Source: Takakia lepidozioides (lineage: Eukaryota; Plantae; Bryophyta). From it: 64,000 bases of DNA. The notes under the pieces were generated by a model. That model was not told where the DNA came from. It worked only from the letters and a program-made list of their open reading frames with translations, and searched no databases. Shown piece after piece: positions 23,833 through 53,700 of the stretch (the stretch's first letter is position 1; each line of letters begins with the position of its first letter). Both the position numbers and the translations under genes were made by a program. The DNA lies in contig CM060734.1 of NCBI GenBank assembly GCA_030704615.1, positions 62,620,001 to 62,684,000 of the forward strand, given 5' to 3'.

Positions 23833-24454
23833 GTATTTTATTACATTTTAAAATAAGTAGTCGCGTGTTTTTTTGTTCTTAGAAATCCAGAGACCCGCCG
23901 TGTGGCATTTTTTATTTATTTTTAATCATGAAGCGGCGCCTCGGCCAGCCACGTGGCGAGGTGCCACAGGTCAGGAAAAACGAAACAAATGGGATAGGGG
24001 GAGGTGGTTTTGAACCCTTGACCTCTCCCATGTGGATGCGCGTGGCGAGGCGCCACTGGCCTGTCGCGCCTTTTCAAGCATAATGCCATTTTATTTTATT
24101 TTTGGGAGGGGGGGTTGGGCGCCTGTATAAACCATTCCCCCCTCCTTTTCTAATCACTTTTGCCCCTCTTGTGGTATGGTTCTTTGGCATCCTGTAGTCC
24201 TTTCGGACTTCGTTGCTTGGCACTGCCAACGGGAGGTGCAAAGGTGATTATTTGGGGGGGGGGAAGGTTTTGTCGGTCTTCTATTGGTCAGTCCCACACA
24301 CTTGTTCACGGTACAATCATCGTATCACCATTTTGCCGTTTCCGGATCTCCGGCGGCCTGTTTTTTTTGCAGAAAACTACGAAGACACCATCCACACGCG
24401 TTCATTGTCATTTTTCTGAGGTTTTGGACCCTGTAGTGGGCAAAGGTTTATACA

Positions 24455-25931: not shown

Positions 25932-26014
25932 ACCATAGTCTCGTAGATATGACATTTTTTGCGGTACAATGGTTCTTTTATGAAGACATAACTCAATTTT
26001 GATCGTGCATGTAA

Positions 26015-26546
26015 TAAATAAAGTCTCATTGTAAATACTACATTGCATAAGCTCGACCCTGGCACCTGTTATCGCAACATAAATGGTTTGTGTACTAGCT
26101 CACTGTTTATATTTGTAATGTTCCAAGGTTTCGGATAGGGTTATGAGAAAACAATGTATTAGTTCCGTAGGAGTTAGACAACAAACGTCTCCTCTCATTC
26201 AACTGTGCGACACTACCATGAGAGGCATGGATCGGAAAGTTATAGGTGCATATGCGACCTTCGAACGTTTGATACTAGGTCTCTACTTAAATGTGCGGAG
26301 GTCGCATGTACACCTATTACTTTTTTATCCATGCCACTCATGCTAGTATCGCACAGTTGAATGAGATATGGAACGTTTGTTGTCCAACTCCTATGGATCC
26401 AATATATCATTTTCTCATTACCCTGTCAGAAACATTGAAACATTCGCAGTTACAAACAGTGCCACAATACACTGCCAGTTTTGTTGAAATAACATTTGTG
26501 AGGTTCGAGCGTATGCAATTTATTATTTACAATGGAATTTTATTTA
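26015..26546. ncRNA. About 530-nt imperfect hairpin
   Basis: For example ctcattcaactgtgcgacactaccatgagaggcatggat pairs with atccatgccactcatgctagtatcgcacagttgaatgag; pairing extends over arms of about 260 nt. Confidence 0.75.
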
Positions 26547-26614
26547 CTCGGGGGACCGGTACTGCTGTTGAAGCGCAACTGATGGTGCGAGTTCTCTATT
26601 GATTAGAACTGTCA

Positions 26615-26992
26615 CAACCAATGTCAACAATCATATTTACGGTAAGGTGTTTCATGCTATTGTTGTTCCTCTAGCTGAATTCTGTAGTACTCTTTTTGCT
26701 ATTCCCATGCCAACGTCCTCTGAGACTGTTATGTTCAAACGGACGTATCAGCCACCCCGGCCAACTTGCAGGTTGCAGCCATGGCCCACCATAAATTGAA
26801 TGAATTGGAGATTTTGTGCGAAGTTCCTGGTTTCATTTCCGTGGTGGCTCATACGGAATTCGGAATATGGCAGTCGTAGTGGACCTGATGTTGTTGGTAT
26901 GGGAGTATCAAAACGATTCCTAAATAATTCTGCTACATGAACATCGGCAATATGAAACACCTTGCAGTACATATGATTCTTGATATTGTTTG
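26615..26992. ncRNA. Imperfect hairpin with a 100-nt ungapped stem, homologue of 19317-19810
   Basis: 26615-26714 versus reverse complement of 26893-26992: no gaps, about 23 differences, about 7 of them G-U compatible on the + strand. Confidence 0.7.
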
Positions 26993-27287
26993 CACGGATT
27001 ATTTGTGTTTGTGCTTTCAAGTGGCGAACATTTCCGCCATGGTGCGGAAGACGTGCATTGGTCACATTAAACGGTTAATGTGATACCATTTCATAAATGT
27101 ATCACATCGCATTTGTGAAAATGGATCACATGAACCGTTCTATGTGGCCTACGGGAGTCTTCGATGGGTACGAGATCAATGTGGCCTACGAGATCTGCTT
27201 CCACCAACAAACATGTGATCATTTCAGAAGCGCTAGAACTTTGAAGCGACGATGGGCAAGGTTCTTCATCCATATGTTCAACATGCT

Positions 27288-27585
27288 GAGTCTTCTGTAA
27301 TGTCTCTTACTTCGTAATGAGGTACTTCTCCAACTCTTATTTTTCCAATGTTAATATCTTCCATCTGGAACATATCCACACATGCGTATATAACTTAAAA
27401 AACCATATGACCATCAAAACTGGAAGCTGGGGATGAGGCTTATAAAAGTTGAGATGGTCATTTGTTTTTTAAGGATTTCTGCACACATATGTGGATCTGT
27501 TCCAGGTGGAAAATATTAACATATTGGATAAAGTGGACATGGAGAAGCACCGCATTACGAGGCAGAAGACACTACAAAAAGAGCT
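27288..27585. ncRNA. About 300-nt imperfect hairpin
   Basis: atgttaatatcttccatctggaacatatccacacatg pairs with catatgtggatctgttccaggtggaaaatattaacat; outer and inner stems extend it. Confidence 0.72.
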
Positions 27586-27603
27586 TCAAATGACATACCA
27601 TAA

Positions 27604-29975
27604 CAGGTCCCAGTATAATCGAAGACGAAACCCCATTCATTCAATGGGCGATTGAATGGTTGCCCATCCAAATGATTTTCGTTTGCTTTCAATCTTTGCC
27701 ACTATGTTCAACATACCATGTATCAGGTCCCGGACTAATATCAGATCAATCGAAATTCATTCGATGGCTCAACGGATGGTTGGCCATCAAAATGATTTTG
27801 GTTCGCTTTGAGACTTGGCCACTATGTTCAATGTGCCATGTAAGAGGCCCCAGAGTAATATGAGATCAATCGAAATTCGTTCAATGGGCCAACGAATGGT
27901 TGCCCATCCAAATGATTTTCGTTCGCTTTGAAACTTGGCCAGTGTGTTCAATGTATCCTCTGATACGTCCCAGTGTAATACGAGATCAATCGAAAATCGT
28001 TCGATTGTCCAATGAGGCGTTCACTTGTCATCTGGTTTTTGTTCAATGCGAAAAAAAAATCCTGCAATGCGTGCACGGTTATTGCACCCATTGAACGGAT
28101 GTGGTTGAAGCCCCTCTTTTGCCCACATGTGCTTGAACATGTGTGCAACACATGTGCGGAGACACAACAGACGAATAAATCATTTGCCTCCCCATCGACG
28201 CGCTCCCCCCTCAAGCCATTCCACAATTTAATTGAATTTAAATTTATTTTAAGCCAATAAATAGGTTTGCACTGCCTTTCAGTGGGGATTTCTGGCACGT
28301 ATCGATTTTTTTTATTGGCTCAATTTTGTTGTGCGGCTTCCAGCATCCCACAGTTACTCCCCCGCCAAAATTTGGACCAATAAAAAATGCCCCAAAAAAA
28401 AAGTGTTCTCTTCGCTCACTATTGCAGAACTCTCTATGAAGAGTGCATGAAATTGAACACAAATCAAGTTTGGAGTGCAAAACAGCGAAGAAACTGTGGT
28501 TTTGGATCCAAATGAATTTCAATCGCTCCCAAATTTGGCAAAAAATCGTGAGCACGTGAAACACAGTCCTACAGGTCCCAAAGCAATAGCAGCTCCAACA
28601 GAATACATTCAACGGGTGAACGGATGGTTGCCCATCCAAATCATTTTTGTTAGCTTCCAAATTTTGCCAGCACGTTCCAGACACCCTCTCACAGGTCCCG
28701 GACTAATATCAGATCAATCGAAATTCATTCAATGGCTCAACGGATGGTTGGCCATCGAAATGATTTTGGTTCGCTTTGAGACTTGGCCACTATGTTCAAT
28801 GTGCCATGTAAGAGACCCCAGAGTAATATGAGATCAATCGAAATTCGTTCAATGGGCCAACGGATGGTTGCCCATCCAAATGATTTTCGTTCGCTTTGAA
28901 ACTTGGCCAGTGTGTTCAATGTACCCTCTGATACGTCCCAGTGTAATACGAGATCAATCGAAAATCGTTCGATTGTCCAATGAGGCGTTCACTTGTCATC
29001 TGGTTTTTGTTCAATGCGAAAAAAAATTCCTGCAATGCGTGCACGGCTATTGCACCCATTGAACGGATGTGGTTGAAGCCCCTCTTTTGCCCGCATGTGC
29101 TTGAACATTGAAACATGTGCGGAGACACAACAGACGAATAAATCATTTGCCTCCCCATCGACGCGCTCCCCCCTCAAGCCATTCCACAATTTAATTGAAT
29201 TTAAATTTATTTTAAGCCAATAAATAGGTTTGCACTACCTGTCAGTGGGGATTTCTGGCACGTATCGATTTTGTTTTTGGCTCAATTTTGTTGTGCGGCT
29301 TCCAACATCCCGTGGCTACTTCCCCGCCAAAATTTGGACCAATATAAAATGCCCCAAAATTTTTATTTATTTTTGCTCACTATTGCAGAACTCTCTATGA
29401 AGAGTGCATGAAGTAGAACACAAATCAAATTTGGAGTGCAAAACAGCAAAAAGAAACTGTGGTTTTGGGTCCAAATGAATTTTGATCGCTCCCAAATTTG
29501 GCACGCACGTTGCATATGGCTACATTACACGCCCCATTCAAAAATGGAATGAAAAAAAAATCGCGAGCACGCGAAACACAGTCCTACAGGTCCCAAAGCA
29601 ATAGCAGCTCCAACAGAATACATTCAACGGGTGAACGGATGGTTGCCCAACCAAATCATTTTTGTTAGCTTCCAAACTTTGCCAGCACGTTCCAGACACC
29701 CTCTCACAGGTCCCGAACTAATATCAGATCAATCGAAATTCATTCGATGGCTCAACGGATGGTTGGCCATCGAAATGATTTTGGTTCGCTTTGAGACTTG
29801 GCCACTATGTTCAATGTGCCATGTAAGAGGCCCTAGAGTAATATGAGATCAATCAAAATTCGTTCAATGGGCCAACGGATGGTTGCCCATCCAAATGATT
29901 TTCGTTCGCTTTGAAATTTGGCCAGTGTGTTCAATGTACTCTGTGATACGTCCCAGTGTAATATGAGATCAATTG
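27604..29975. repeat. Higher-order tandem repeat: 120-bp monomers within about 970-1015-bp units (about 2.4 copies)
   Basis: Monomer starts at about 27604, 27724, 27844 and 27964; the block recurs at about 28572 and 29587. Confidence 0.9.
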
Positions 29976-30413
29976 AAATTATTTTGTGCTTTGTGTTCGT
30001 AGAAAGATCATAGATTTTGCGAAATGATTATGAAATACGCAGGGACCAGGCGAAATTTGTTTGGAAGAGGACCGTTCGTAACTCGTTATAATTTATTTGT
30101 TAACATCAATTTTCCTTGTTCTACAGCTTTCGGAGTTCATTGCAAATACCCATATACACGTCATGACCAAATATGACACCATTGTAAATTTGTTTACAGG
30201 GTGAACTACTTCTTCCCCATCACACGAGTGTAAATGTGAAGAAAACGCTGCTCATGCAATTGAAATTGGCAGGTGCCGCACATGTGCATTGTGTATTAAC
30301 AAAATTGGTGATATACAAACTTGGCGGAATGCCATCACTGTGTTTTCCAACAATATTCAAGGTACAACAAAAATGCATATTGTATATGTACTATGTTGCT
30401 AGTCATTCAAAGC

Positions 30414-32645
30414 CTAGTCGTCACTGTCCGAGGATGTGGAATTGGATGTTGTGGCCTGATTTGCACTGCCAATTGCCAGAGCTTGCGTCCGTGATCTCGT
30501 GGTCAATGAGGGGCTCAATGGCATGTGATCAATTATGGCCTGCATCCGCCTACTTCGCGACGAAAGTTGATTTTCTTCTTCACTCTCACGACGTGACGGA
30601 GGTGGATCGAGAACAAGTGCTCGGGCTGCTTGCAAATCGGCAACGAGGCCGTCCACATCCGCCAATACAGCCCCCGAAACACGATGATAACGGTCTGTCC
30701 ATAATCGTCTCCATTTCTCTACAACTGCCTTGATGGTACTTTTGAAACTTTCCAACTGCCTCTTGCGCGGCCCTGTCCCTAATCATTGTGTCGTTTCGAT
30801 GATAAGCCGCTCCGTACACATCATTCATTCGGCGTTGACATATTATAGCATCTTCCAGTTCGGACAGCAACAAATGTCTCCCAATCGGTTGTCGGTTATA
30901 CAATTCGTTCTCCTCCGGCACCCATGGAACCTGTGGGAGCCGGATAAACCTGGACCTTCTTTGACTCCAATGCCCTCCCAGATTGCGGCAAAACTGCTCT
31001 CTCTCCCACCAATCTCGAATACCTCCCGCACGTATGGTTATCTCCCAATCAGATGTGACCCAGAAATACTGGGGATCTTTGATGTATGCCGGGTTTCCGG
31101 CATGTATGCCATGCATCTCTCTGTCTGCATCCCATACCAAGTTCTTGCCCCAATGCACACAATTCAAAAATGTGTATGGTAGCCAGGTTGTGTCGATTGT
31201 GTTCAAAACCTATGGGCATCCGATCCTCCAAGCCCATCAGCTCATAGAAACGGCGATGGATTAGTGTACGGCATTCTGGGCAAGCGCTCGTCCGCAAGGC
31301 TTGCGGGATAAGACATGTGAGATGGAACATATGTCCATATGATCCAAGCACATGACATCCCTCTGGGCCGTATGGATTCCTACACATCGAACAAACTGTG
31401 CCATCTGATATCCATGATGGCAAAACGCCTTGTGGTATCTCCTCCCTCTGGGCCGGTTTGATGTGGCTGGTCATCTTGGTGTCCCACTCTTCCTCTATCT
31501 CTAATTCCCAGTTTATGCTTCTGTTGGACCCCAAAATTCTGTGTTCACATCGATCGAACATAGAATCCACATCTGCCCCAATTGGTATACCCGACGAACA
31601 CGCTTGATGCGATGCGGAGATCGTTATACCTTTGCATGTTGGTATAAATGCTATACACGCTACGGTTCGACAAGCGTGCGACACGTTGCAAGCCTGACAG
31701 TGTCCGCTCTACCGGTGCTTCTCTGGAGGCCAAATGGGTCGCCCATTATACCCAATTCTCCCAATCATCATTCAATGGGACCCATGCCTGAATCTCCAGC
31801 GTTTTGGACAAGCGCCATGCAGTTGCCATGGCAATGTCTCGCTCCTTTGTAACGCGGTCGATATCTAATATCGGGTTCATCTCCGATTGAATGGCGATCC
31901 TCGAGCATTCCCCAGTTTCCAGTACTGGTTCTTTTCTTTTCCTCCTTCTCTCATCCGCAATTCGTTGTTCCTCAACCACGGTTTCATTGGCCACAAGGTC
32001 AAGAACGTCCGTAACTTCCTGAATGATAAGGTCAATACTGCGATCGGGCATCGCAAACTCCGCGTCCATATCCACGACATTTGTTCGATCCTCATTGTGG
32101 ACAACAGTGCCTTCATTGTTTGGAGACATGTCTTGCAATGTAGCTTCCAACTCGGCTATGCGCAGTGGTTGCCAGTCTAGTCGGTCCTGCAGGGTCCTGA
32201 TTCGTTGGTCTCTTTCCGCCAGTTGTTCCTCTAACGTTGCAGCCGGTTGTATTCCGAACGTGTCCGGGATGTACTCCAAATCGTATAGCAACCTTGCGTT
32301 CCTCCTACTAGCAGTTTGTCAATTCACTGGACGCAAGAGTATGACATCCACGTACAACATGGCTGCCAAGGTATACGAGATTTGACCCTTTAAGAGAGGT
32401 TGACCCCACAATGTGCAATGCACCTCATTCGCCCTATGCTGGAAATGATCGTTCGTGCAAGACCTGGACTCTGCGTAATTGTTTCGGGTTTGCACGTCAT
32501 GCATATCCAAAGGCCACAATCGATTGATGTGGTACCATTTCACGAATTTTTTGTATCTCGCCATCGGCCACCATAACTTTTCCGGAACATTCTGCCAGCC
32601 CTCTTCTGTTAGTATGCTAGGGTCACCAAATACTTCCCAATTCAA
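30414..32645 (-). pseudogene. RING-H2 finger protein (candidate E3 ligase; hAT cargo), frameshifted
   Basis: CSMCRNPYGPEGCHVLGSYGHMFHLTCLIPQALRTSACPEC (third ligand C>Y); overlapping collinear ORF pieces include a coiled-coil and an ERRRKRK basic patch. Confidence 0.7.
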
Positions 32646-33092
32646 AGTCTTGCCTTGACCCTTTGATTTTCTTAGGTGGGGTCATCTCTTCCATGATGGT
32701 CATTGTACTGGCCCTCTGCCATTCTACAACAATCGGAGCAACACTAAACGAGGTTTTCTAAAAAGACGTAACTCTAAACCCTTCCCCTGTTAAATAGGTT
32801 TGAGTAGGTGTCAAAATACTTCTTAAAAGCTAATTTTGTAGAATAAAATGATCCTGGAAGCCAGAGGAGGGCCTATGGGAGCATTCTGCAACGAACTCAC
32901 AGAAATCGCGGCAAAAAATACCCCCCACCCAACCAATGGCCTCCTTCTCCACGTGACTACGTGTCGTGGAATAATAAAATGCCACGCACACAGAAGTTGT
33001 GTGGAGAGGAAGTGAGGGGAGAATAAGCCTCCCTTGGCTTATATCCCCCTCCTCCCCTCATTTCTCAGGCCACGTGCATGGCGAATCTTCTA

Positions 33093-34692
33093 GAAGCGAC
33101 TTCCAATTTGGCGGTCGCTCCATTTTCTGGGAAAAAAAGAAAAACGACCGTAACAACAAGCGGTCGCTCCATTTTCCGGAAATAAAAAAAATAAGCGACC
33201 GCCAACATAGGCGGTCGCTTCATTTTTTTTAAAATAAAAAAAATAAGCGACCGCCAACATTGGCGGTCGCTTCATTTTCAAAACAATTAAAAAAAATAAG
33301 CGACCGCCAGCATTGGCGGTCGCTTCATTTTCAAAAACATTTAGAATAAATAAGCGACTGCCAACATAGGCGGTCGCTTCATTTAAATTTTAAAAAAAAA
33401 AAACAAAAACGACCACTGGCATAGGCGGTCGCTTCATTTAAAAAAAATTAAAAAAAATTAGCAACCGCCAGCTTTGGCGGTCGCTTCATTTTCAAAATAT
33501 TTAGAATAAATAAGCGACCGCCAACATAGGCCGTCGCTTCATTTTCAAAAACTTTAAAAAAAATAAACGACCGCCAACATAGGCGGTCGCTTCATTTAAT
33601 TTTTTTTAAAAAAAAAGCGACCACCAACATAGGCGGTCGCTTCATTTTTAAAAAATTTAAAAATAATAATCGACCGCCAACATAGGCGGTCGCTTCATTT
33701 TCAAAACATTTAAAATATATAAGCGACCGCCAACATAGGCGGTCGCTTCATTTTCAAAAACTTTAAAAGAAATAAGCGACCGCCAACATAGGCAGTCGCT
33801 TCATTTTAAAAAATTTAAAAATTTTTAAAAAAAATAAGCGACCGCCAACATTGGCGGTCGCTTCATTTTTAAAAAATTAAAAAATTAGCGACCGCCAGCA
33901 TTGGCGGTCGCTTCATTTTCAAAACATTTAGAATAAATAAGCGACCGCCAACATAGGCGGTCGCTTCATTTTCAAAACTTTAAAAAAAAATAAACGACCG
34001 CCAACATAGGCGATCGCTTCATTTAAATTTAAAAAAAAAAAATAAGCAACCACCAACATAGGCGGTCGCTTCATTTAATTAAAAAATTAAAAAAAATAAA
34101 ACGACCGCCAACATAGGCGGGCGCTTCATCTTAAAAAAATTAAAAAAACTAAGCGACCACCAGCATAGGTGGTGGCTTCATTTTCAAAACATTTAAAATA
34201 AATAAGCGAGCGCGAGCATAGGCGGTCGCCTCATTAATTTTTTTTAAAAATAAATAAACGACTGCCAGCAGAGGCGGTCGCTTTATTTTCAAAACGTTTT
34301 AAAAAAATAAGCGACAGCCAACATAGGCAGTCGCTTCATTTTCAAAAACTTAAAAAAAAATAAGCGACCGCCAACATAGACGAGCGTTTCATTAAAAAAA
34401 AATAAAAAAAAATAAGCGACCGCCAGCATAGGCGGTCGCTTCATTTTCAAAACTTTTAAAATAAATTAGCGACCGCCAACATAGGCGGTCGCTTCATTTC
34501 CAAAATAATTAAAATAAAAGCGACCACCAGTAATGGCGGTCGTTGCATCTTAAAAAATAACCATCACAGCGACCGCTATAAATGGCGGTCGCTGCATTTT
34601 GTAAAAACAAAAACCGCCAGTAATGGAAGTTCACTCCTTGCTCCATGCGCAGGTCACACTTAGTAGAAGCGACCGCCACTTTGGCGGTCGCT
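33093..34692. repeat. Internal array of about 30 AAGCGACCGCCAACATAGGCGGTCGCTTCATTT palindromes with poly-A/T linkers
   Basis: Directly visible, period about 49 bp. Confidence 0.95.
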
Positions 34693-35476
34693 CCATTTAA
34701 ATAAAAATGAATGCACAGTTGGAAGCATGACACAATTGTTCTCCATTCCACAAGCAAATTACCGAACACAAACATGAGCAAGTGACGGTGCCTTTGGCCG
34801 ACATTTTGGCTGGTATATACATGGGCAACATCTTTTATTTTCCAACACATACACAACAACAATACAAATACTCATAGTGACAATGATCACATTGGTATTA
34901 TTTCAGTACAGAAATATAAACATGTGTACTAAAAAGTGCGGATGCATGCCTACAACTGTTTTGCTTCAATTTATTCTTCTGCTTCGACGGCGGGACGAAG
35001 AAGATCCTAATCATAATGCTCCGATGGGTTGAAAATCCGGGACACCCTCGACTTCACCACCGTTGTCATGATGAGTGCTGGAATCGTCCTCCCTATCCGA
35101 CCTCATATGTCTAGGCCTTTGAATCTGCAAGCGACCTCGAACCACATTTAGTTCTCTCTGAGGTCGACTCCCGCTCCAGTCTTGAATACCATCCACGGTA
35201 TCTGGCCTGTTTGTGGGCCGATCGCCTACAAAAGGTTGGACTGTTCTCTGTCGTTTATGGACTTGGGACGCAATCGAAGGTGGTCTCGAGGGAGGTATCG
35301 GAGGGGGGACTGCCCGAGATGGATCGGCATTAGATGGTCCGGCATGTGAGGAACTACGGGTCTGCTGCGCAACACGTCGGTTAAGGTGGAATTGTAGTGG
35401 CAGGTTGTCATCATCCGAGGCTTCAACTTCCGCCCGGTCCAATGCAGCATAATGATGCATGCGTATGGAAAATAGA

Positions 35477-37969
35477 TCAACCCTGTTGCTTCTTAATGCC
35501 CGCTGTGTTGATGGGGAGCTGGATCGGTTTTGGCATTGTGGTGGTGCTGGTCGTATTGGTGAGGTTTGATCCCGTCCCCGTCGACTGTACAATGGGTTCG
35601 ACACCATCGTTGATATGAACAGAGTTGCGTACGTCGATCGGTCCTGGCAGTACATCACCCCTAAGCTCCATTGGGGCACTACCGGTGGCTTCAGCGTATA
35701 GTGGGGGGCAAAGGTCGACCCCAACTTCATTTTGAGGACCATGTTCTGGGGATGACACAATTGCAGCTTCACCTTCATCTGCGATACGCACTTCTTCAAG
35801 AAGGTCATCAAAGGTCGGCTGGATATAAGCATCATCCTCTGTGAATGTAAACGGGTCATACGCATTTTCGGGAGCATCATCGGATCCATCTACACTATCG
35901 GAGGCAGATGATTCCCTCTGAGATGATTCTCTCTGAGGCTCAATATCGTTACTCATCGAATCAGCCTCAGAAGCAAAGTCTTCGGAATGCAAATTCCTCT
36001 CATACCATGCTGCAGCATCATCCGCTGCCCTCTCACGTAGCAGTCGGCAATTGGTATACACATACGCCAATTTATCAGCCCTCGCGAGATTCAACCTGTT
36101 GCGAATCTTGTTGTGAACAAGTGAGTAACTGCTCCAATTGCGTTCGTAAGATGAGGCAGAGCACACTTGAGCAAGAATACGCTTCGCAATGGGAGCCAAT
36201 GTTCTTGCTCCAGCTCCAATCAAATCCCACCATTCATGTGGCAACATATTGAGCTCTTTGGGATCCGACATGTCCTCAAAAGGGTCGCGGCGATCTGAGA
36301 AGCATTGGTACTCGGATATAGCTCTCTCTGCATGGGTCGGCGGAGCCAGTCGCATGAGCACTCGCACGAGGCCGGCCTTGGCATCAGCGTTGTCTCGGAG
36401 CATGGTATTGTCGAGCAAAAATGGATTGAGCAAAGCCCCCGCATAATGCAAGTCCGTTCGAACCATCGAACGACGGTCGTAAAATGCATCCTCAACACTG
36501 TCCGCAAGTTCAAGTTGCAAGGAGAAGGGAGGATGCCTCAAGGATTGGACGTGCTTCTCAAGATTTTGCATTAATAACCATGTCTTGCCCATTACTGGTT
36601 GCTTTCCATCAAACTCCCGCAAGACGATTAATACCGGCTCAACCATATAAACAAAGTTTTCACATTTCTTCCAGAAATCATCGCTGCGAATGCTATTTCA
36701 AACTTTTCGATTTTTGCCCAATGACTTGGCTTTTCTGGAGTCCCGCAATGTCCGTGTGTACGCATCCCATTGAGGATCGATGATGGTGTGCTCCAGACTG
36801 CTCTTCACCGTCACCAACCGATCTACCATCAAGAAGTTAGTGGCAAAACGAGTTTCACCTGGATTGCAGAGGTTGTATTTGGGTTCGTGCCTCCTATATA
36901 TTGAAAAAGGGATGTGGTGTGTGCGGATGAACGACACAATAGTCTTCGCTCGCTTGACAAGTTGTTTCACCCATTGTTCTTTTCCCCAATCTTTCAAAAG
37001 GAGGTCAACGATATGAGCAGCACAACCGTGATAGTACATATGAGGATAACGTGCCAACAACATGTCTGCAGTGTTTCTCATGTTAGCGGCATTGTCTGTG
37101 CATATTTGCACGATTCTATCACTTCCGACCTGTTCGATGAAGTCCGTAAATAGTTGACATTGATAATGTCCATCTTTCTTCTCGCCGCTAGTGTCCACCG
37201 ATCCCAAGAATTGTTCCCTAGCTGGACATACAAGCATGACATTGAACAACGGTCTGTTTGTGACAGAACTCCAACCATCGGCACATATAGTGCTTCCATA
37301 TTTTCTGATACACTCGTCCGTCCTATCGTTGACATTTTAGGTAAGCTCGGTCATGACGTCTTCTAGCAATCATGTACGGAGATTGTGATAAGTCGGAGAC
37401 ACGTACGTGGATCTGGACTCCGAGGTTGCTCTAACAACATAAACAAATGCCGGAAGCCTTGCCACATTAAATGATATATTGGCCTCGAAGAAAAACTGCG
37501 TCCATTTTTTATTCAACTGTCTTTTCGCAGACAAGTTAAGACCTTCTTGCATGGATTGCTGCCGTAATCCTCTACTCTGTTGAAATGTAGGGGTACAAAG
37601 AGGTGTTGAAGCAGGTGTTGCTCCGGCACAACCCACTTGTCCAAGGACATCCGAAGCTCCACAAGAGTCGCCCTGGGTACTAATCGGGGCATCCTGATGG
37701 GAAGATGGAGTGTTCTGCTCAGAGGTCATGTCCAGATCCAAAGACATTGGAATATTGCCTCCACAATAGGCAAAGTGGCTTTTTACCCGTATGAATGCTT
37801 TGGGGCATAAACCTACCCCAGCGCTCTTCACACCTTTATAGCCGAGGTTAGCGAACAATCGATCTTTACGATAAAAAAGCTTTAATCCACATAGGTTGCA
37901 CTCAACACTACCAGTGACACTGACAGTGTTCATGATTGTTGTATACCAAGGGCTTCATTCCTCCCTCAT
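35477..37969 (-). pseudogene. hAT transposase (BED-like finger, DUF659 region, C-terminal dimerisation domain), disrupted
   Basis: CNLCGLKLFYRKDRLFANL; IVQICTDNAANM; HGCAAHIVDLLLKDWGK; PGETRFATNF; EWWDLIG...LAPIAKRILAQVCSASSYERNWS; several stops and frameshifts. Confidence 0.93.
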
Positions 37970-38414
37970 CTTCACCCAACATCCACTCCCCTGGGACCTA
38001 GCGATGCAAGCAACAAAAAACAGTCACCTATAAATGAACGTGTTGTGAATGTAGAGTGCAATGCGATAGCCCAACACTTCTACACCTGTTAGCAACCCAA
38101 GTGGTTCGATGTGGGTTTGTAGTGTTGAGCTTATACACAATTTGCTGAAGTGGCTTTAGTGGAAGCCACAACGGTAAAAGGTGCGCACCCTCCTCTTGGG
38201 CTACACTCTCGTTCAATGGAAGAGAACATCTAAAGAAACCTCAAGTGTTTGGGCCAAAAGAACTGATGAGCTTGGTGACCCTCCTCCCTTATATATGATC
38301 CAAGAAGGATGAAAGTGAAATGAAAGTGAAATGAAAGTGAAATGAATAAATGACGAACCAATAGCGCCCACCCAAAAAAGGTTGTACAACCATATTTGTT
38401 TGTAATTTTGAAAT

Positions 38415-40062
38415 TAAGCGATCGCTAATACTACGGTCCGTATTTTTATTTTTTTATGAAAAACAAGCAACCGCCACTACTGTGGTCGCTTTTATTTCCT
38501 TTCATTTTGTGCAATATTGCGGTCACTTCTCTTTTGTATATTTTTAAATTTAAACGACCGCCAAGATAGCGGTCGCTATTTCTTTTTTTAATTCGAAAAA
38601 TAAAGCGACCGCCAGTGCGACCGCCAATCTTGCTTTTATTAAAAACAAATTTGAAGCGACCGCCAATCTGGCGGACGCTATTTCTTTTTCTATTTCGAAA
38701 AATAAAGCGACCGCCAGTGCGACTGCCAATCTTGCTTTAAGAAAAAAACAATTGAAGCGACCGCCAATACGGCGGTCGCTATTTCTTTTTAATTTCGAAA
38801 AGCAAAGCGACCGCCATAATTGGCGGTCGCGTTTATTTTGTTAATTTTCAAAAATGTATTTGCCACCGTGCGACCATCAATACGGCAGTTGCTTGTTTTC
38901 TTTTTTAAATTAGGCGACCACCAATACGACCGCCAATCTTGTTTTTTTAAAACAATAAATTGAAGCGACCGCCAGCATCGCGGTTGCTATTTATTTTTAA
39001 ATTCGAAAAATAAGGCGATCGCCAGTGCGACCGCCACTCTTGCTTTAAAAAAAAAAACATTTGAAGCGACTGCCAATATGGCGGTCGCTATTTCTTTTTC
39101 TATTTCAAAAAAAAAGGCGACCGCCAGTGCGACCGCCAATCTTGCTTTATAAATAAAAAAATTGAAGCGACCGCCAATATGGCGGTCGCTATTTATTTTT
39201 TAATTTTGAAAAACAAAGCGACCGTCATAATTGGCGGTCGCGTTTATTTTGTTAATTTTCAAAAATGTATTCTCCACCGTGCGACCGCCAATATGGCAGT
39301 CGTTTGTTTTCTTTTTTAAATTAGGCGACCGCCAATACGACCGCAATCTTGTTTTTTTTAAACAATAAACTGATCTTTAAAAAAAAATTGAAGCGACTGC
39401 CAGCATAGCGGTCGCTATTTATTTTTTAAATTTGAAGAATAAGGCGACCGCCAGTGCGACCGCCAATCTTGCTTTAAAAAGAAAAACATTTGAAGCGACC
39501 ACCAATATGGCGGTCGCTATTTCTTTTTCTATTTCGAAAAATAAGGCGACCGTCAGTGCGACCGCCAATCTTGCTTTTTAAAAAAATAAATTGAAGCGAC
39601 CGCCAATACGGCGGTCGCTATTTATTTTCTAATTTTGAAAAACAAAGCGACCGCCATAATTGGTGGTCGCGTTCATTTTGTTAATTTTTAAAAATATATT
39701 TGCCACCGCGCGACCGCCAATACGGCAGTCGCTTGTTTTTAAAAAAAAATTAGGCGACCGCCAATACGATCGCCAATCTTGTTTTTTTAAAACAATAAAT
39801 TGAAGCTACCGCCAGCATAGCGGTCGCTATTTGTTTTTTTAATTCGAAAAATAAGGCGACCGCCAGTGCGACCGCCAATCTTGCTTTTAAAAAAAAAACA
39901 TTTGAAGTGACCGCCAATATGGCGGTCGCTATTTTTTTTTCTATTTCGAAAAATAAGGCGACCACCAATCTTGCTTTAAAAAAAATAAAAATTGAAGCGA
40001 CCGCCAATACGGCGGTCGCTATTTCTTTTTTAATTTCGAAAAACAAAGCGAATTGGCGGTCG
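38415..40062. repeat. Right subterminal GCGACCGCC palindrome/dimer array with higher-order units of about 420 bp
   Basis: Alternating gcgaccgcc..ggcggtcgc palindromes and gcgaccgccagtgcgaccgcc dimers. Confidence 0.92.
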
Positions 40063-40305
40063 TGTTCATTTTGTTAATTTTGAAAATGTATTTGCCACCG
40101 CCACCGTGTCGGCGACGTGGCTGCTTAAGTGGCAGTATTTTACCTAGTATTATTTTTACCATAATATTCCCCGAACCTGACGTGACTTGACACTGACTGA
40201 CGGACGTGACGCTGATAACCGGGCTCGGAAATCACGATATTGTGAATTGTCAATATAGTCAAGAAGAGGCTTGAACTGTGGATCGTTAACTTTGAAAGGT
40301 GGAAA

Positions 40306-40800
40306 TCATATTCTCCTTGCTTTCAAGAAGCTTGAGACGTTCTCAAATTTCAAGAAGCTAAGCAAGAAATCTCTAAGTTTGAGAAGGAAGAAATCGTCGA
40401 CGTCGATGTTCTCAAAAGACTTGAGAAGAAGACAAGATTCAGGAGGGTTTAGCAAACACTTCAAAGCCGTATCATCAATCAGCCGAGTGTTACTCTGATT
40501 GTAAAAACCTTCAGAACTCTGCCATACTTTAAGGAGTGGTTTCAAGAACACATGAGGTTGATCTTGTCCCGTTCGGTAATTTCGGTGCAGATTGCTTGGG
40601 CAAATGATACAATCGTCCTGCGACATGATGAACGTCGGCCGTGGAAGACCACGTAGGAGCAAATCCAGAACTGCATTTAAGTTTTTAGGCACCATGCAAC
40701 TCCAAATACCTAAAATGAAGTGCTTGTGTAACTCTTGCCAAACTTCCCGGTACATCTTCCGTCTAAAGATTTGGCGATACCCAACAATAGCAGAAATGAT
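40306..40800 (-). pseudogene. Second FCP1/NIF-like HAD domain (C-terminal part)
   Basis: LHKHFILGIWSCM...FIMSQDDC...VFLKPLLKVW...YNQSNTRLIDDTALKCLLNP. Confidence 0.75.
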
Positions 40801-41065
40801 GTAATCTTGATTTACTTAAGTGTCTTTATCACTCCTTCACAGATCTGACAGCCGGGATCTCCTCCTGTGAGGGGACCCCGCTTGATAATTTTGACGTTAA
40901 TGGAGTGCTATGCAAAATAACGAAGCACCAGAGCCCACATTTTTCGGACAATAACTAATCACTTTAATATCCCATGTTCCACTTCCAGGGCCTCTAGGTA
41001 CTTTAGATGTGCATCTCATTCCTCCTTGTTCCTAGGCCATGGAAAGTCCCAGCGATTAATGAATT

Positions 41066-41575
41066 TCACTCTAGCATCCTGAAAGTAGATATCCTTAGGT
41101 ATTCCAAAAGGGTTCTGCTCATTGAAGGCCCAAGTGTCCATTTTTGAATGCTCAACTTCTCCAGGTGGGGCTTCAAATGACCCATCAAAAAATCATCCTT
41201 GTATGGATCTACAAATGCTTCGTATTTAGGTAGGAAGATGACCAGTCTCAGAGGATTGAGGAAAGACTTGTACATGTTCCCAACGACGTCGATAAGCAGG
41301 GTATTAGACCTGTAGGCTTTAGAGTCGGGGTCTACGAACAAGTCGTAAAGTCGTTTGAAGTAGATTGGGGCCTTAGGTAGCATAGGCCAATATGTGTTGA
41401 AAGTAAGTCTATGTTCCACACATTGGTCGGAACTGTAATGCATGACCTCGTGGGCGTTCCTCCCGAACAAGGCTGATTTGAAATCCACGATAGTCTCTTC
41501 TTTGCCAGTGTTCCATATCATGACCCAAAACTTTTTGACGACCCATTTGAGGAAGTCTCCCACCTCATGTCGCAT
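41066..41575 (-). pseudogene. Third FCP1/NIF-like HAD domain
   Basis: MRHEVGDFLKWVVKKFWVMIWNTG...SSDQC...IYFKRLYDLF...SNTLLID...KSFLNP. Confidence 0.7.
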
Positions 41576-41579
41576 TGCT

Positions 41580-43061
41580 AACTTAAACGATGCGGCAGCG
41601 AAGGGGACAAAGGGTAAAGGTAAACGGAAGTCAACGGCGGGATCCTCTCAGACTGAGAATGAGGAGGAGCAGCCAGCCGGGAAAAAGAAAAAGAAAGAAG
41701 AGCTGGATATTGTATATATGAATGACAACAAGAAACCAAAAGCTGGCGAGATTTTCGACAAGGTGAAGTGCGAAGCGATGAATCAAAGTCTGAAGAATGA
41801 CTACCAAGACATGTTTCCTTTTGGGTTCAACCGCATAATCTTAATTGACATCTCAAGGATGGAACTTGCTCCAAGAAGCATGGTGTATCGTCCGCTGAAT
41901 ATTAATCACAAAGATGAAGTAAAAGCCCGTCTGTACCAGTTGCGGGTTCTAGATACGAAACATCCTGTCTATCTGGCGCCGAGGAATGAACAAGTGCCAA
42001 CCCAGGTGTCTGCGATGAAACCAAGGCATCAGAAGGATATTAACAATTCAAAATTCTTCGTCATTGGAGGCCAGCACACAATTATGGCTGCAAAGGTATA
42101 GTACATCAACGTTTACCTCGCGCGATCGCGCGGGCTTCTATATTCTTCTTAGGTTCTATGATAATCATCTTTCGGATATTTCTTTGCGTTGTCTCATTAT
42201 CATTCTCGCGCGATCGCGCGTGCTTCTATTAGATCGATTATATCATATGCATCGACGACTTGTTTATAAGAGATGCATAGCATGATAAACAAGCACGTGC
42301 GATCGCGCGTGCTCCTTTCTAGTTCAATTCCATGCCGATGTAACATTTTCCAAATCATGAACTTGTGGAGGAGATTACTGACCAGGAGCAGATGCGCCGA
42401 ATGGCCATCAATTATCCTCTGGTCAGATAGCAATAATCGATTACTGAAGATTTATAAGCTCCTGAACGACCTCCAAGTGAAGAAGAGGTACAAGTTCAAC
42501 AAGTCGGAGTTCGAGACATTCCGATCGAAACTGGGGGCCAAATACATGAAAAGCAAAGTGAACATGAATATGAAGACCGAGAAAGTGAGTGACGCTTTCA
42601 TCAAATATGCGCTTTCATGTAAGAAAAGGGTTGAAGACATGGAGAAGGAAATAGGCAACCTCAAGGATACCTTCAAGTCACATTACCAGTGCATAGGAGG
42701 GAAGCGGAGGTTCACGGATGCCAAAACACAGTTGAAAATTGTGCGAAAGAGGGATTTCAATAACATCGCAATGGTGTTCGTCAACACAGTCTGTGATGAT
42801 GACTCAACTGTTTTCATGCAAAGAAATTACAAGAATATTTTTGATGCGTTCTTCGAACAACAGCTGAGCCCTAATGCATTTGTCTTCTTCTCGACGCAGA
42901 GGTCCTCTTCCAATCTGGTTTCGTACATAAGGTTTGGCGAGGGGCAGGACAAGTATATTCTGCTTCAGGGGTTGTATCTTCCTGGAGAGTTCAACAATCC
43001 TTACATGGGCCGTGACATCCATTTGGACCCATTGGAAGAGCAAAGAAATATGAGGGATTGA
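41580..43061 (+). pseudogene. ParB/Srx-like domain protein fragment, intron at about 42097-42350
   Basis: YRPLNINHKDEVKARL...HPVYLAP...FFVIGGQHTIMAAK resembles the ParB N-terminal G-G-Q/N-H motif; 5' end missing. Confidence 0.5.
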
Positions 43062-45959: not shown

Positions 45960-46631
45960 GAACTGGTTCAAGTACACTCCAGTGTGCCCGTGAAGAATCT
46001 TTCCATTTTTGATGATTCCGAATGGTCGGAATTTACAGTTGACGTAGGTGTGTATTGTGCCAAAAATGAGGCCAATGCAGCCGACCCGGGTCTGAGGTGG
46101 CTAAAGTATCATATTGATGAGTATTATGGGGATCCCGGAGTATACCCTGGCGATGAGGGTGTATACTTTGGGGATGCCGGAGTGTACTCTGGGGTTGAGG
46201 GAGTGTACTCTGGTGATACGGGAGTATACTTCCGGGGATCCAGGTGTATAATCTTGAGTATTTGGTGTATACGCAGGGTACATAGCGCAAAAATCATTTG
46301 ATTCCACCGATACTTCAGCTACAGGATCTCCGGAAGACCCTCCACAGTATTGTTCTAGAAAAGAACTTAAAGCTGCTGATCCGGGGGGAACGTCGCAAAA
46401 ATATTCTATTGGTGAATAATTGTCCTGATCGTTTGATTCAGGGGAGTAGGTGTCAGGCTCCTCTGTGGATGGAATTGTAGAAACTGGAGATGATATGACG
46501 TGAACTCCTTTAGAAGGTCCCGTCATAATAACTGCAGCTCCGCATTCACCTTGTGAGGAGGGTGAAAGTGTTGCCTTGTGTCCGGTATGTTCCATCTCCT
46601 TCTTCTCCTTCATCGAACACGAATCCACCAC
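45960..46631 (-). pseudogene. Protein with seven RNA Pol II CTD-like heptads
   Basis: After correcting one extra base near 46229: [48 protein letters not shown]; 21-bp DNA periodicity at about 46124-46271. Confidence 0.7.
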
Positions 46632-48882
46632 ACTGGAAGAATCATCAAGAACTCGTGCTCAGTTACAGACTGTACAGAAGGAGACACGCGAAGAACGCAT
46701 GATTGCGCGTATTTGGTTCACAATTTTCCCTCCAATAACGTAAAATCCGATTGTAAGCAACAACGACGTTGCTAAGCATAGCGAACAGAATCCATATACA
46801 TGACTTTGTTCTTTCAGTCATATAAGAGTATCCTAACATCTATTATCCCAAGAAAACTCTTCTGAGCTGTAGGAACATCAGAACCACGCACGAGTGAGTT
46901 GAGGCACAGATGAACTAATTTCATCCCACTGCGAGAAGTCTACCGGAAGGACTATTAAAGTACATTGAGAACATTGAGGATTATCTAGGTGGGAGTCGTT
47001 TTTATTTATATTTAGAATAAGACTGAAACAAAGAAGTCAAATTTGCGCTATTGCGTAAGGTTTAATAATTGCATAATCCATAAAATTGAAAACGATGAGT
47101 TTACTGACGTACTAATGAATGATTTTTCGACCCCGTACAGTTTGGTATTAGCTACTATTCGTTAGTTCTTCTGTAGGTGACGACTTGCACTGAATGATGC
47201 ACGCGCAATCGCGCGCGCACCTTTAAACCATTCTTGGACATCACATCTTCACTGTCTAATCTGAAACAGTGGTCGACATAATCGATGAACAACCTAAGCG
47301 ATGTTGACGACAAGTAATATTTCAAACTGCCCTGGACTTTTACTATTGTATACTATTGTGTCCACACTGAACACCTCCGCCCATCATACATAAGAGTGAC
47401 CATATAGGAATTATCATATTCTGTGTGCATGAAAAGACAGATAAAGTGCAACGGAAGATTTTAGTTGACATTGTATAATGTGACCTAATGTCTTTTGAAA
47501 CACTTTACAATTTTGAGTATGCACTCAGACATATCATCATATGTGTCATCTAATCATCTGGGTATCAATAGTGTTGTTGTTGGTCGCTAGAATACAAGTA
47601 CCAACCAAATGAAGCACGCGCGATCGCGCGTGCTTCTTCAGGGCATTCTTTCGCATCACATCTTCAATTTCTCATCCAATGCAGTAAACTACGAAGTCAA
47701 ATTAGCATGATTGTGCAAGGTTCAATAATTGCATAATCCTTAAAATTGAAAACACTGAGTTTATTGTCCTACTATTCGTTAGTGCTCCTATAGGTGACGA
47801 CTTTTACTGAAATAAGCACGCGCGATCGCGCGTGTTTCTTCAGACCATTCCCTTGCTGAAAGTGCTTGCTGGCCTCGCTCCAAGTCCTAACCAAACCATG
47901 TTTCGCAATACTATCACTGAAATAAACACGGGCGATCGCGCGAGGTTTCTCTACGGCTTACGAAATCACTAGGAATCCCTATTTCGAGAGGCACGTAATG
48001 CAGATCATGGAAATAATGTGCATAACCGAATCGAGCCAAAAACACAGTTTGGTATCCAGAACTCTACATGGTAAAATGAGTTCACGCGCGATCGCGTGTG
48101 AATGGACTGTGTCATGGTACCTATACTGAGGCCTACACCATAGGCTGCAAAACCTAAATAGTTGCCAGCTGTACCTACGAACCCTATGAAATCGGAATTT
48201 CTCATGTCTCGAATCCGGAGTCGTTCCTCAAGGAAAGCGTACATATCCCGAAATCTTTCACAATTCCCAATCCTTCTATCGACCATCCTACCTCTTTAAC
48301 CCTGGAATCAATCCAAAAATCAAAACAAGTAATCAAAACAATGAAAACAAACAATAATTCGAACAAACAATAATTCGCTCAAACAAGCAAACAATCAAGC
48401 AAACAATGAATCAAGCATGCAACTTCTACCTTCCTGCAATCTCTGCAGCCCACGGAAGAATCCTCATTGCATGCACGAAGAAGACGGGAAAATTTTTTAC
48501 CTGCTTGATGCCATTTCAGGCAAGGAACCTCCCTGCAGGGCTGGATGAGCTCTCTCGCTCGGGTGCGCACAACAGCTTCCGGGATAGCGTACTCTTTTGT
48601 TTTGCCCTCCTTTCACTCTGTCACACTCCCCCGCACACAGTGAATTGCTCAAACCCACACTCACTCCAACTCACGCTCCCTCGATCTCTCACTCTCTCGC
48701 TTCCTCGATCTCCACCTCTCTACCTCTTTCGCTAAGTCACTCTCTCTCGCACCTCTTCCTTGAGTCCAAAATTGAACAGTGCTTCCGCATGTATCAAATG
48801 AATGCAAAAGGAGACTCCTCCTTATATGTCTTACCACGTGTGATCTCAACTGTTGGCGTTATGTCGCATCCGACGGTTTGTG

Positions 48883-50786: not shown

Positions 50787-53700
50787 ATGTCGTTGTTCCA
50801 AACTGGTCAACAAGTTTTCCTCACTCTTCAGGGTTGGAACTCTATCGTCGCAACAACATAATGTCTCAACGTCACTGGTTGCGGAAGTTGCCATGGACGA
50901 CAGCTAAACGGGTCCACAATATCTGTTGTTATAGTGTCTTGCGATCCGACACATTCTTCTGTGTCGTTGCCATATCCGCACATGGATGCGGACTCTTTGG
51001 GAGAAGCAATTGGAACACCTGTCGTTTGGGATGTGGTGCAAATTCAAAAAGATACTGGGACTGACACCAACACCAACAATGAGGTTCCTTAGTTCTCGGA
51101 GGTCGCATTGACATCTGCGGCTGATTACCATCCAAAATTCAATGAACAAATTGAATCTGGCATGTCAAGGCTGTCTCCGAATAACGATGTTGCTATGGGT
51201 AGAGACAGTTGGAGAAATAAACTGTGTATTTCTCCTTGGAGATGAACAAAGTGCTTTGTACGAGGGCAGAATTCAAGCATGTCATCCTGACGAGGTGATA
51301 CTTTGTGAGAAAGTTGGAGAACATCACGTCGGGGTGCTCGTTACAAGGATTTTGAATGGCGGTTCGACCAATCTCATGTGTCTCGTGAACTGGCCATTGA
51401 CGCAGACTCGGTTCATTGATAGTGGCAGGACATTGTCACATGAGCTTCATAGATTCATCAATAGTCGGGAACAAACAGATATTGGTCATAACGAGAAAGG
51501 TGTGAAAAAAGCAGCATACCGGCATTTCAACAGACCAAAAAAAGATCCGAAAAAAGACGATTCCAAAAAGATAAATACTCGCCTCTCTATGCAGGCAGTT
51601 CGAGAAGTCAACTACAAACAATGTTGCAATTTACAGTGTTGCCAATATTTCGATTGGAGAAAAACACTCGCTATCCAGACCGCTTATTGGGGATCCTCTT
51701 ACGACGAACGGAGAGAGCTCGGTTTTGATGTTCCCAAAAGACTTCATCAAATCGACGGGGTTTCGACAAAGGCCTATATAACCATTGAGGGCGTTGATGT
51801 GTGTGAGACAGCTTGGTGGACAATTCACGGAATCGGTCGTTCAACCTACATGGAATACAAAAAACTAAGCAGAGAGGGTGTGGTTACACCGTTGCACGGG
51901 AATTCCGGAGTGAAACGGCCTCGTCCACAAACACGACAAGCTGAAGGAAACTTAATGTCAATTATAAACGGAAATTCCGATCTCATGCCTCATAAGACCC
52001 GTTGTATTGGAGACGGATGGAGAGATACTCTTCGAGTTCTCCCACCTGAATTGAACTGGAAAAAACTTCGCGAAGAGTGTAATGAGGTCAATTTTTTTTT
52101 TTTTTACCACTTTTCGAATTCTATATTTTTGGGGACCTTCCCTGTTTTGCTTCCACGCAATGTATCAGACCTCTCACTATTAAAGCTCGGGTGATCGCGC
52201 GAGGTTCATATCCCCCTGTCTGTCTTGCAGGCGAATAAAATATGTGGATTGAAGCCTATCTCCCAGGCAGCCGTCAGCAGAATCAGACAACGGATTTTTC
52301 CCAATGTCGAGGTTAGAAAAAATGGTAGCACGTTTGTCAAATGCACAGACTGTGAGATGCTCAAAGAACTAATCAAGAAGTCGGTCAAACGTAGCGATGA
52401 GCAGGCCTCGCACAAGAAAGCACTTGATAAGCACCTCAGGCTTCAGGAGTCTTGCAGGAGACTCTATCACAGCTGGAGGAATGAATTAGCTATGATGTCG
52501 TCCGAGTTCCTCTGCATCATTCATGACAAGGTGGATCATCGGAAAACAGCTATTCCAAGGTTGCAGACGACGAACAAGATGGTCTCTGGCTTAGGTCAGC
52601 TTCCAATCTTGCTAACCGGAATGGTCACACATGGCCACAGGGACGGAGCCTACGGACAGTACTCTCTGGACTTCTGGCCGGGAGACCCGAACTTCACGAT
52701 TGGCTCTCTAGCAAGATGCCTCCGCTAACTAGAGAAGCCCTCTTGCCGCGAAAGTCGTAACATCTTTGACCACCCACCTCAGAATTCCTTTTTCGAATCT
52801 CTCATGAAGGGTAAATCGAGGTGTCTTGACGTCCTGAAACCTTTCGGCGATAAGGAGAAGAAAAAAAGAAAAGTCACACTTCCGCGAAGACTCTACCTGC
52901 AGTTGGACAACTGCGTGAAGGAAAACAAAAATAGGTGGATGCTGGCTTTTCTGTCGCTCCTAACTGCAAGAGGAGTGTTTGAGGAGATTCAGATGGGATT
53001 TCTCATGGTTGGCCATACCCATGAGGACATCGACGGATTCTTCAATTATTTATCGAAAAAGCTGAAGAAAAACAACACCTACGTTCTCTCCGATCTTATG
53101 AGGTTTTTTATAATATCTCAAGATCTGCAATTTATTCCTCAAATCATTCAAGAGGTGCCAGATTTCAAGGCGTATGTGGACGGTTGCATTCTCGATGGAA
53201 AAGATGCTTTAGTTGGGCAAACATAAATGCATGTATTTCGATTCTATGTAGATGAAGATGGTTGGCCTGTCATGAAGTTTAAGAAGTTTGCTACTGATTC
53301 TGAGTGGCTCCCCAAAAAAAAGTGCGGTGAAGATGTAGAAGTCGAATCCCGATGGATCTCCAAAGTTCCCTATGGCAGTACAACCCAGGGCTGTAAAAAA
53401 AACACCAATTTGGGGTGTGGGAGATGACTTATCCGAAAAACAGTCTTTTATCAAAACTGAAATTAAAAAATACTGGGAGTTCTGGAAGAAGGGGATGATG
53501 CTTGACGATCATTATCGTGACATCATGATACAGTATGATCAATACTGGGAAGCAATCCTTGCAGAACTTGATCTTCCCATTCCTGGAGAATCACGACATT
53601 CAATCGCGCTTAAAGGGGGTTTTTGGCCCTCAACCAAATGGGCTGTCAACCACCACAGAGCCGGAATCCATACACCCGCAGAGGATGATCTGTCGGAAGA

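What the first reader, a model, noticed from the sequence alone, without database searches (positions are those of the whole stretch)
45960..46631. Transposon-encoded RNA Pol II CTD mimic in the same element as CTD-phosphatase-like domains
Seen: a 21-bp repeat hidden by a 1-nt frameshift encodes seven tandem heptads ([48 protein letters not shown]). Y1 and P3 are invariant and S/T5-P6 is kept in six of seven, while the DNA units differ at synonymous sites and at positions 4 and 7, which points to protein-level selection. Known: the Pol II CTD consensus is YSPTSPS and FCP1/SCP-type HAD phosphatases act on it. Inference: the element pairs a CTD decoy with FCP1-like domains to recruit or titrate CTD-binding factors (capping, splicing, chromatin), possibly as a way to escape silencing. 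I know of no described transposon with this pairing.
Basis: partly seen in the sequence, partly recalled or inferred. Interest (0 to 1): 0.92.

Follow-up and report, generated by a model that had tools for sequence, protein, structure and literature searches.

The report
Decayed CTD-like heptad array in repeat
A plant repeat element carries a real run of seven YTPxSPx heptads that resembles the tail of RNA polymerase II and lies upstream of three phosphatase-like domains, but this copy is a broken pseudogene and a decoy role is untested.

Summary
On the minus strand, 46271-46127 encodes seven YTPx(S/T)Px heptads split by one extra base at 46229. Variation sits mostly at third codon positions. 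The five in-frame heptads just pass Pfam's Rpb1 C-terminal-repeat threshold.

The array is not a C-terminal end. The TAA after heptad 7 and a TGA 15 nt further on lie in frame inside a second copy of the module that precedes the array. This copy is therefore a pseudogene: one frameshift and two in-frame stops in the ORF, plus a 730-bp insert and a 16.9-kb hAT in the unit downstream.

Three NIF-like domains lie on the same strand. The third appears only once the hAT insertion (8-bp target duplication) is discounted. Its catalytic DxDxT motif reads S-V-N-G-L.

The unit is multi-copy in DNA runs of the organism. The ORF flank has no relative among 1.84 billion proteins, so capture from RPB1 or SPT5 is not supported.

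Linkage to the DUF7869 transposase-like ORF rests only on a shared palindrome. A PPR fragment lies between them and no termini were found.

The scan noted such heptads 21 times on other DNA of this genome. I could not read those copies. The CTD-decoy function remains speculative.

The parts
46127..46271 (-). Seven YTPx(S/T)Px heptads (21-nt units), with one extra base at 46229 that shifts the frame after unit 2
   Evidence: PF05001 E 5.3e-4, 20.6 bits against a cutoff of 20.3 for the five in-frame units
46272..46658 (-). Upstream part of the same open frame: Ser/Pro-rich with YSP motifs. Module 1 (YSPIxYF...PGSAALxSFLxQY) lies at 46418-46341
   Evidence: no homologue in 1.84 billion representatives
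45971..46126 (-). Continuation in the heptad frame: TAA at 46126-46124, TGA at 46111-46109, and module 2 (46123-46046), a diverged copy of module 1
   Evidence: 16 of 26 residues identical, 9 synonymous codon changes, 62% nucleotide identity
43538..44267 (.). Nested insertion of a very high-copy repeat that other copies lack
   Evidence: summed depth about 2e6 against about 2e3 beside it; a joint 43537>44268 appears in X1 and X5 contigs
41069..41647 (-). NIF-like domain a (weak)
   Evidence: PF03031 E 1.2e-3, 19.0 bits, below the cutoff of 21.8
40309..40815 (-). NIF-like domain b, with the motif IV DD pair kept
   Evidence: PF03031 E 8.6e-8; weak, non-significant match to UBLCP1 chain 3shq_A, E 0.03
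23345..40223 (.). Nested hAT transposon that splits the unit
   Evidence: 8-bp target duplication CTCGGAAA at 23337-23344 and 40224-40231; hAT dimerisation domain and DUF659
21081..21873 (-). NIF-like domain c, in two frames. Motif I reads S-V-N-G-L (codons AGT and AAT at 21765 and 21759)
   Evidence: PF03031 E 2e-8; the motif I alignment is by eye
18950..19228 (-). Diverged third copy of the YSPIxYF...PGS module, with no heptads after it
   Evidence: tblastn E 8e-9; tblastx 54 bits in the minus frame with no DNA-level match
51112..53223 (+). Transposase-like frame with two in-frame stops (52192-52194 and 52726-52728); DUF7869 and a DDE-like signature
   Evidence: PF25273 E 2.2e-34
47612..48104 (.). 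Cluster of the roughly 24-bp palindrome built on CGCGATCGCG. Further instances lie at 20.1-22.1, 42.1-43.3 and 50.6-52.2 kb
   Evidence: 12 matches against 0.37 expected; 14 extended instances, all confined to these blocks

Best explanation
The segment is a decayed copy of an orphan protein-coding gene carried by a lineage-specific, multi-copy, transposon-like unit of a plant genome. The ancestral minus-strand ORF encoded a Ser/Pro-rich, probably disordered protein. It comprised a roughly 25-residue module, then six to seven YTPx(S/T)Px heptads, then the module again. Three divergent NIF-like (FCP1/SCP/UBLCP1-type HAD fold) domains lie downstream on the same strand. The heptads diversified under selection on the peptide. 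Shown: the array, the modules, the constraint, the NIF hits, the multi-copy status and the breaks in this copy. Inferred: in intact copies the array acts as a row of proline-directed phosphorylation or docking motifs with the geometry of the Pol II CTD. It would be open to CTD-type kinases and readers, and possibly to the neighbouring NIF-like domains, which look like non-catalytic binders rather than enzymes. Here the gene is dead, through a frameshift and two in-frame stops in the ORF and two nested insertions in the unit downstream.
For: Array and frames. Third-position excess. Minus frame favoured: tblastx 54.2 against 38.2 bits to the in-window paralogue with no nucleotide-level similarity, and module 1 against module 2 gives 16/26 against 12/25 identical residues with 9 synonymous codon changes, including CTA/TTG. 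Rpb1-repeat profile passed. NIF-like domains. The hAT target duplication shows the unit was continuous. Multi-copy: X1 contigs cover all of 40700-46699, with up to 15 distinct contigs at single variant sites. No homologue. Other notes on this genome report the same combination, unverified.
Against: No sister copy could be read, so family-wide conservation of the open frame is unverified. The heptad ORF has no coverage in the two runs guessed to be RNA. Whether the heptad ORF and the NIF domains share one transcript is unknown. No terminal inverted repeats or target duplication were found for the unit. A PPR fragment separates it from the transposase-like ORF. The PF05001 score exceeds the threshold by only 0.3 bits. 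YTPxSPx-type runs occur in unrelated proteins.
Confidence: 0.55

Rival explanations
1. Intact family members express a Pol II CTD decoy. Together with the NIF-like domains it recruits or titrates CTD-binding factors to help the element's transcription or its escape from silencing.
For: The heptads pass the Rpb1 repeat profile. Y1, P3 and S/T5-P6 are kept under constraint. Three NIF-like domains lie on the same strand. The combination recurs in the genome according to other notes.
Against: There are only seven units. T2 replaces S2, position 4 is free, and position 7 is mostly acidic. NIF-c lacks both catalytic aspartates. NIF-family members have many non-CTD substrates. There is no expression, binding or phosphorylation evidence. 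This copy is dead.
Confidence: 0.15
2. The array is a 21-bp minisatellite in dead repeat DNA. The heptad reading is incidental and has no protein-level meaning.
For: This copy is a pseudogene. Tandem Repeats Finder reports only 75-80% matches. No RNA contigs lie on it.
Against: There is a third-position excess. The flanking modules are conserved at the protein level but not the DNA level. Unit length is kept at exactly 21 nt in all seven units.
Confidence: 0.1
3. The heptads and flanks are a passively captured fragment of a host gene: RPB1, SPT5 or another host protein with Ser/Pro heptads.
For: Plant transposons often capture gene fragments. A PPR fragment lies at 48879-49299. Unrelated plant-like proteins with EYTPxTP runs exist (L001).
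Against: A 143-residue query containing the flank and two heptads found nothing at E<=1e-3 in 1.84 billion representatives. There is no similarity to L001 or to the 50 other heptad-bearing loci. The module is triplicated within the unit.
Confidence: 0.1
4. The plus strand is the coding strand, reading GDxGVYx heptads in the open frame 45888-46298.
For: This 137-residue frame is open across the array. It shares the wobble positions, so it is equally periodic.
Against: It scores lower against the paralogue (38 against 54 bits) and has lower module identity (12/25 against 16/26). S/T exchanges on the minus strand become D/V on the plus strand. It matches no Pfam family. It is hit by the same frameshift. 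The neighbouring NIF domains are on the minus strand.
Confidence: 0.07

Closest known systems
RNA polymerase II largest-subunit C-terminal domain (YSPTSPS repeats, Pfam PF05001)
   Same: Heptad period, invariant Tyr1 and Pro3, Ser/Thr5-Pro6, two potential proline-directed phosphosites per unit, and a profile match just above the curated cutoff.
   Different: Seven units rather than 26-52. Thr at position 2, a free position 4 and mostly Glu at position 7. It is not attached to a polymerase, has no flanking homology, and lies between two copies of an unrelated module.
FCP1/SCP/UBLCP1-type NIF phosphatases (PF03031, HAD superfamily)
   Same: Three domains match the NIF profile. Motif II Ser (IWS) and motif IV DD are kept in two of them.
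   Different: They are very divergent, with no significant match to a solved chain. Three occur in tandem. Motif I of the readable domain has Ser and Asn in place of the two aspartates, which suggests a non-catalytic fold, like TIM50 among NIF relatives (from general knowledge).
Accessory or captured genes of plant DNA transposons (for example ULP1 protease genes in MULE and CACTA elements; general knowledge)
   Same: A host-like domain set travels in a multi-copy repeat beside a DDE-like transposase ORF.
   Different: The content (CTD-like heptads plus NIF-like domains) was not found in the literature searched. The boundaries of the element are not defined.
Short-motif mimicry of host proteins by viruses (general knowledge)
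   Same: A selfish element carries a short repeated host-like peptide motif.
   Different: Those cases have shown binding partners. Here no interaction has been tested.

Membership tests
Rpb1 C-terminal repeat (PF05001) | Score at or above Pfam's gathering cutoff | tested here: met
   20.6 bits against 20.3, E 5.3e-4, 3 stretches, for 46127-46318 on the minus strand. The margin is very small.
Rpb1 C-terminal repeat (PF05001) | Consensus Y-S-P-T-S-P-S | tested here: not met
   Position 2 is Thr in all seven units. Position 4 is N/G/V/S/A/S/G. Position 7 is D/E/E/E/K/G/stop.
Rpb1 C-terminal repeat (PF05001) | Lies at the C-terminus of the polymerase large subunit, with flanks homologous to RPB1 | tested here: not met
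   No hit at all for the flank plus two heptads in 1.84 billion representatives. No Pfam family on the flank.
NIF / FCP1-SCP phosphatases (PF03031) | Profile match above the gathering cutoff | tested here: met
   NIF-b 32.5 bits and NIF-c 34.5 bits against 21.8. NIF-a at 19.0 bits is below it.
NIF / FCP1-SCP phosphatases (PF03031) | Catalytic motif I, DxDx(T/V) | tested here: not met
   NIF-c: a hydrophobic strand followed by S-V-N-G-L, codons AGT and AAT. The alignment is by eye and from one decayed copy. Motif I was not located for NIF-a or NIF-b.
NIF / FCP1-SCP phosphatases (PF03031) | Phosphatase activity on CTD Ser2 or Ser5 | not testable with these tools
   This needs an enzyme assay.
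Cut-and-paste DNA transposon | Transposase ORF inside the unit | tested here: inconclusive
   A DUF7869 ORF with a DDE-like signature lies 4.5 kb away on the other strand. It shares the palindrome motif, but a PPR fragment lies between.
Cut-and-paste DNA transposon | Terminal inverted repeats and target-site duplication | tested here: inconclusive
   None found between 16.4-19.0 kb and 54-57 kb. Sister copies are needed.
Cut-and-paste DNA transposon | Multiple dispersed copies | tested here: met
   X1 contigs at 90-99% identity cover all of 40700-46699, with many variants per site. Dispersal is known only from other readers' notes.

The most novel reading that the evidence does not exclude
A plant transposon family encodes its own Pol II CTD-like phospho-peptide array together with three catalytically dead NIF-like reader domains. 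Intact copies use the pair to engage the host CTD kinase, phosphatase or reader machinery at the element. This would be a form of CTD mimicry not described for any mobile element.
Probability: 0.15. Interest if true: 0.85.

Novelty: new variant of a known kind. Interest (0 to 1): 0.55.

Why it matters
If intact copies make this protein, it would be a mobile element carrying a mimic of the Pol II tail next to domains from the family that reads or erases CTD marks. That would give a direct handle on how a transposon might tap the host transcription cycle or evade silencing. Even without that function, the family is an orphan protein with no relative in 1.84 billion sequences, and it shows heptad arrays arising and being maintained outside RPB1. 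This particular copy is only a fossil, so its value is as a pointer to the family.

Tried and rejected
- Representative-library search with the heptad ORF flank: 0 hits.
- Word-index searches with the transposase N-terminal part and with NIF-c: 0 hits. The length window limits what these can find.
- Two metagenome scans for sister copies. None were found. The 51 loci with three YTPx[ST]Px units are unrelated, mostly RPB1-like tails, and show no similarity to the flank or the NIF pieces.
- Earlier-findings lookup by sequence: blank.
- Search for a ParB-like domain reported in a sister copy: not found among the ORF pieces scanned.
- AlphaFold on ORF 45056-45514 gave pLDDT 45, and the Atlas lookup was uninformative, so no fold search was run.
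- PDB sequence search: no significant match for NIF-c, and only a weak, non-significant UBLCP1 match for NIF-b.
- Terminal repeats of the unit: none found.
- Complex prediction was not run. The NIF pieces lack motif I and the insertion domain that forms the peptide groove, so neither outcome could be interpreted.

Full report
**What is there**

The window is plant DNA: it holds PPR repeats and a hAT transposase with DUF659.

On the minus strand, seven 21-nt units start at 46271, 46250, 46228, 46207, 46186, 46165 and 46144.
- They read YTPx(S/T)Px.
- One extra base at 46229 shifts the frame after unit 2.
- Tandem Repeats Finder sees period 21.
- The array is the only one of its kind in the window: six Y[ST]Px[ST]P hexapeptides against 0.24 per shuffle.

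**Is it coding, and on which strand**

Differences between units fall mainly on third codon positions.
- All positions: 80 of 144 pairwise differences, P about 0.01.
- The five conserved codons: 60 of 76, P about 0.002. This subset was chosen post hoc.

The plus-strand mirror frame (GDxGVYx, open frame 45888-46298) shares the same wobble positions. The codon pattern therefore does not by itself pick the strand. The flanks do, and they favour minus.
- A diverged paralogue of the upstream region at 19228-18950 matches by tblastx at 54 bits in the minus frame and 38 bits in the mirror frame. blastn finds nothing there.
- A 26-codon module before the array (46418-46341) recurs right after it (46123-46046). 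The two copies share 16/26 identical residues and 9 synonymous codon changes at 62% nucleotide identity. The mirror frame gives 12/25.
- The plus-strand ORF hits no Pfam family.

**State of this copy**

The TAA after heptad 7 (46126-46124) and a TGA at 46111-46109 are in-frame stops inside module 2. The array was therefore internal to a longer ORF and not a C-terminal tail.

Damage in the ORF itself:
- the frameshift at 46229;
- the two in-frame stops.

Damage in the unit downstream of the ORF:
- a 730-bp very high-copy insert at 43538-44267, which other copies lack;
- a 16.9-kb hAT element.

This copy is a pseudogene.

**Neighbours**

NIF (PF03031) matches lie on the minus strand.

| Domain | Coordinates | E-value | Against the Pfam cutoff |
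|---|---|---|---|
| NIF-a | 41647-41069 | 1.2e-3 | below |
| NIF-b | 40815-40309 | 8.6e-8 | above |
| NIF-c | 21683-21081 | 2e-8 | above |

- The hAT element at 23345-40223, noted by another reader, is confirmed. It has an exact 8-bp duplication CTCGGAAA on both sides.
- Before that insertion the three NIF domains and the heptad ORF formed one continuous stretch of about 8-10 kb. This fits a 9.7-kb sister unit described in note s1-447691.
- NIF-b and NIF-c keep the motif IV DD pair.
- The exon-like piece upstream of NIF-c reads a hydrophobic strand followed by S-V-N-G-L where DxDxT is expected. This alignment is by eye.
- Asp to Ser needs two substitutions, which suggests a long-standing non-catalytic form rather than recent decay.
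- The NIF family also includes UBLCP1, Dullard and TIM50, so a NIF hit does not mean CTD specificity (general knowledge).
- The only weak PDB match is UBLCP1, at a non-significant E 0.03.

**Is it a transposon**

- DNA contigs of the organism (run X1) cover all of 40700-46699 at 90-99% identity, with many variants per site. The unit is therefore repeated.
- On the plus strand, 51112-53223 is one frame with two in-frame stops. It carries DUF7869 (E 2e-34) and a DDE-like signature.
- A palindrome of about 24 bp built on CGCGATCGCG occurs 14 times, only within 20.1-22.1, 42.1-43.3, 47.6-48.1 and 50.6-52.2 kb. It ties the two halves of the split unit to the transposase block.
- A PPR fragment (48879-49299) sits between the two blocks, and no termini were found. 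"Same element as the transposase" is therefore plausible but not shown.

**Relatives and origin**

- The flank plus two heptads found no protein at E<=1e-3 among 1.84 billion representatives.
- The NIF-c and transposase pieces also found nothing.
- Capture from RPB1 or SPT5 is therefore unsupported.
- The five in-frame heptads score 20.6 bits on the Rpb1 repeat profile, against a cutoff of 20.3. This is a formal but marginal match.
- Metagenome scans returned only unrelated heptad-bearing loci. One is a grass-like protein with EYTPxTP runs (L001), which scores below the cutoff. Such runs are therefore not unique to polymerase tails.

**Expression**

Two runs guessed to be RNA have contigs on 44268-45057 and 45365-45852 but none on 45900-46699. 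Contigs cannot show strand or splicing.

**Reading**

The best-supported account is a fossil copy of an orphan accessory gene of a lineage-specific repeat family. Its heptads were kept by selection on the peptide. Their likely role is as proline-directed phosphorylation or docking motifs.

The CTD-decoy idea fits the anatomy but has no functional evidence, and I give it about 0.15.

Twenty-one notes on other DNA of this genome describe similar arrays, some as intact ORFs. I could not read those copies, so they count as leads only.

No literature on a transposon with this content was found.

Noticed in passing
window 20089-22075, 42115-43321, 47611-48104, 50614-52210: A palindrome of about 24 bp centred on CGCGATCGCG occurs 14 times, only inside the heptad/NIF unit and the transposase block (12 core matches against 0.37 expected). 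One instance lies inside the transposase frame. It is a candidate binding site for an element protein.
   Followed up: partly
window 23345-40223: A 16.9-kb hAT element with an exact 8-bp target duplication, CTCGGAAA, and imperfect TTATCA-containing termini, inserted between NIF-b and NIF-c.
   Followed up: yes
window 43538-44267: A 730-bp nested repeat with a summed k-mer depth about a thousand times that of the surrounding unit. Empty-site joints appear in two DNA runs. It is probably one of the most abundant repeats of this genome.
   Followed up: partly
window 52192-52194: The in-frame TGA of the transposase-like ORF sits in a CpG-rich palindrome where CGA is expected, which fits methylation-driven C-to-T decay.
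   Followed up: no
window 12094-16587, 48879-49299, 63774-64000: PPR gene(s) with large internal tandem duplications (periods 246, 414 and 276), plus PPR fragments about 75% identical further along. The repeats seem to be inserted in a PPR cluster.
   Followed up: no
L001 71-952 (minus): A GC-rich, grass-like metagenome contig encodes a 294-residue protein with a transit-peptide-like start and many (S/T)P(E/D)YTPx(S/T)P runs. It is unrelated to the window's ORF outside the motif.
   Followed up: partly
window 44700-44900 (minus): An acidic Asp/Glu-rich ORF piece (44686-45093) and a 153-residue ORF (45056-45514) lie between the heptads and the NIF domains and match no family. Contigs from a run guessed to be RNA lie on them.
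   Followed up: partly
window 57378-58172 and 10930-11589 (minus): Fragments of non-LTR retrotransposons: a reverse transcriptase domain and a zf-RVT domain.
   Followed up: no
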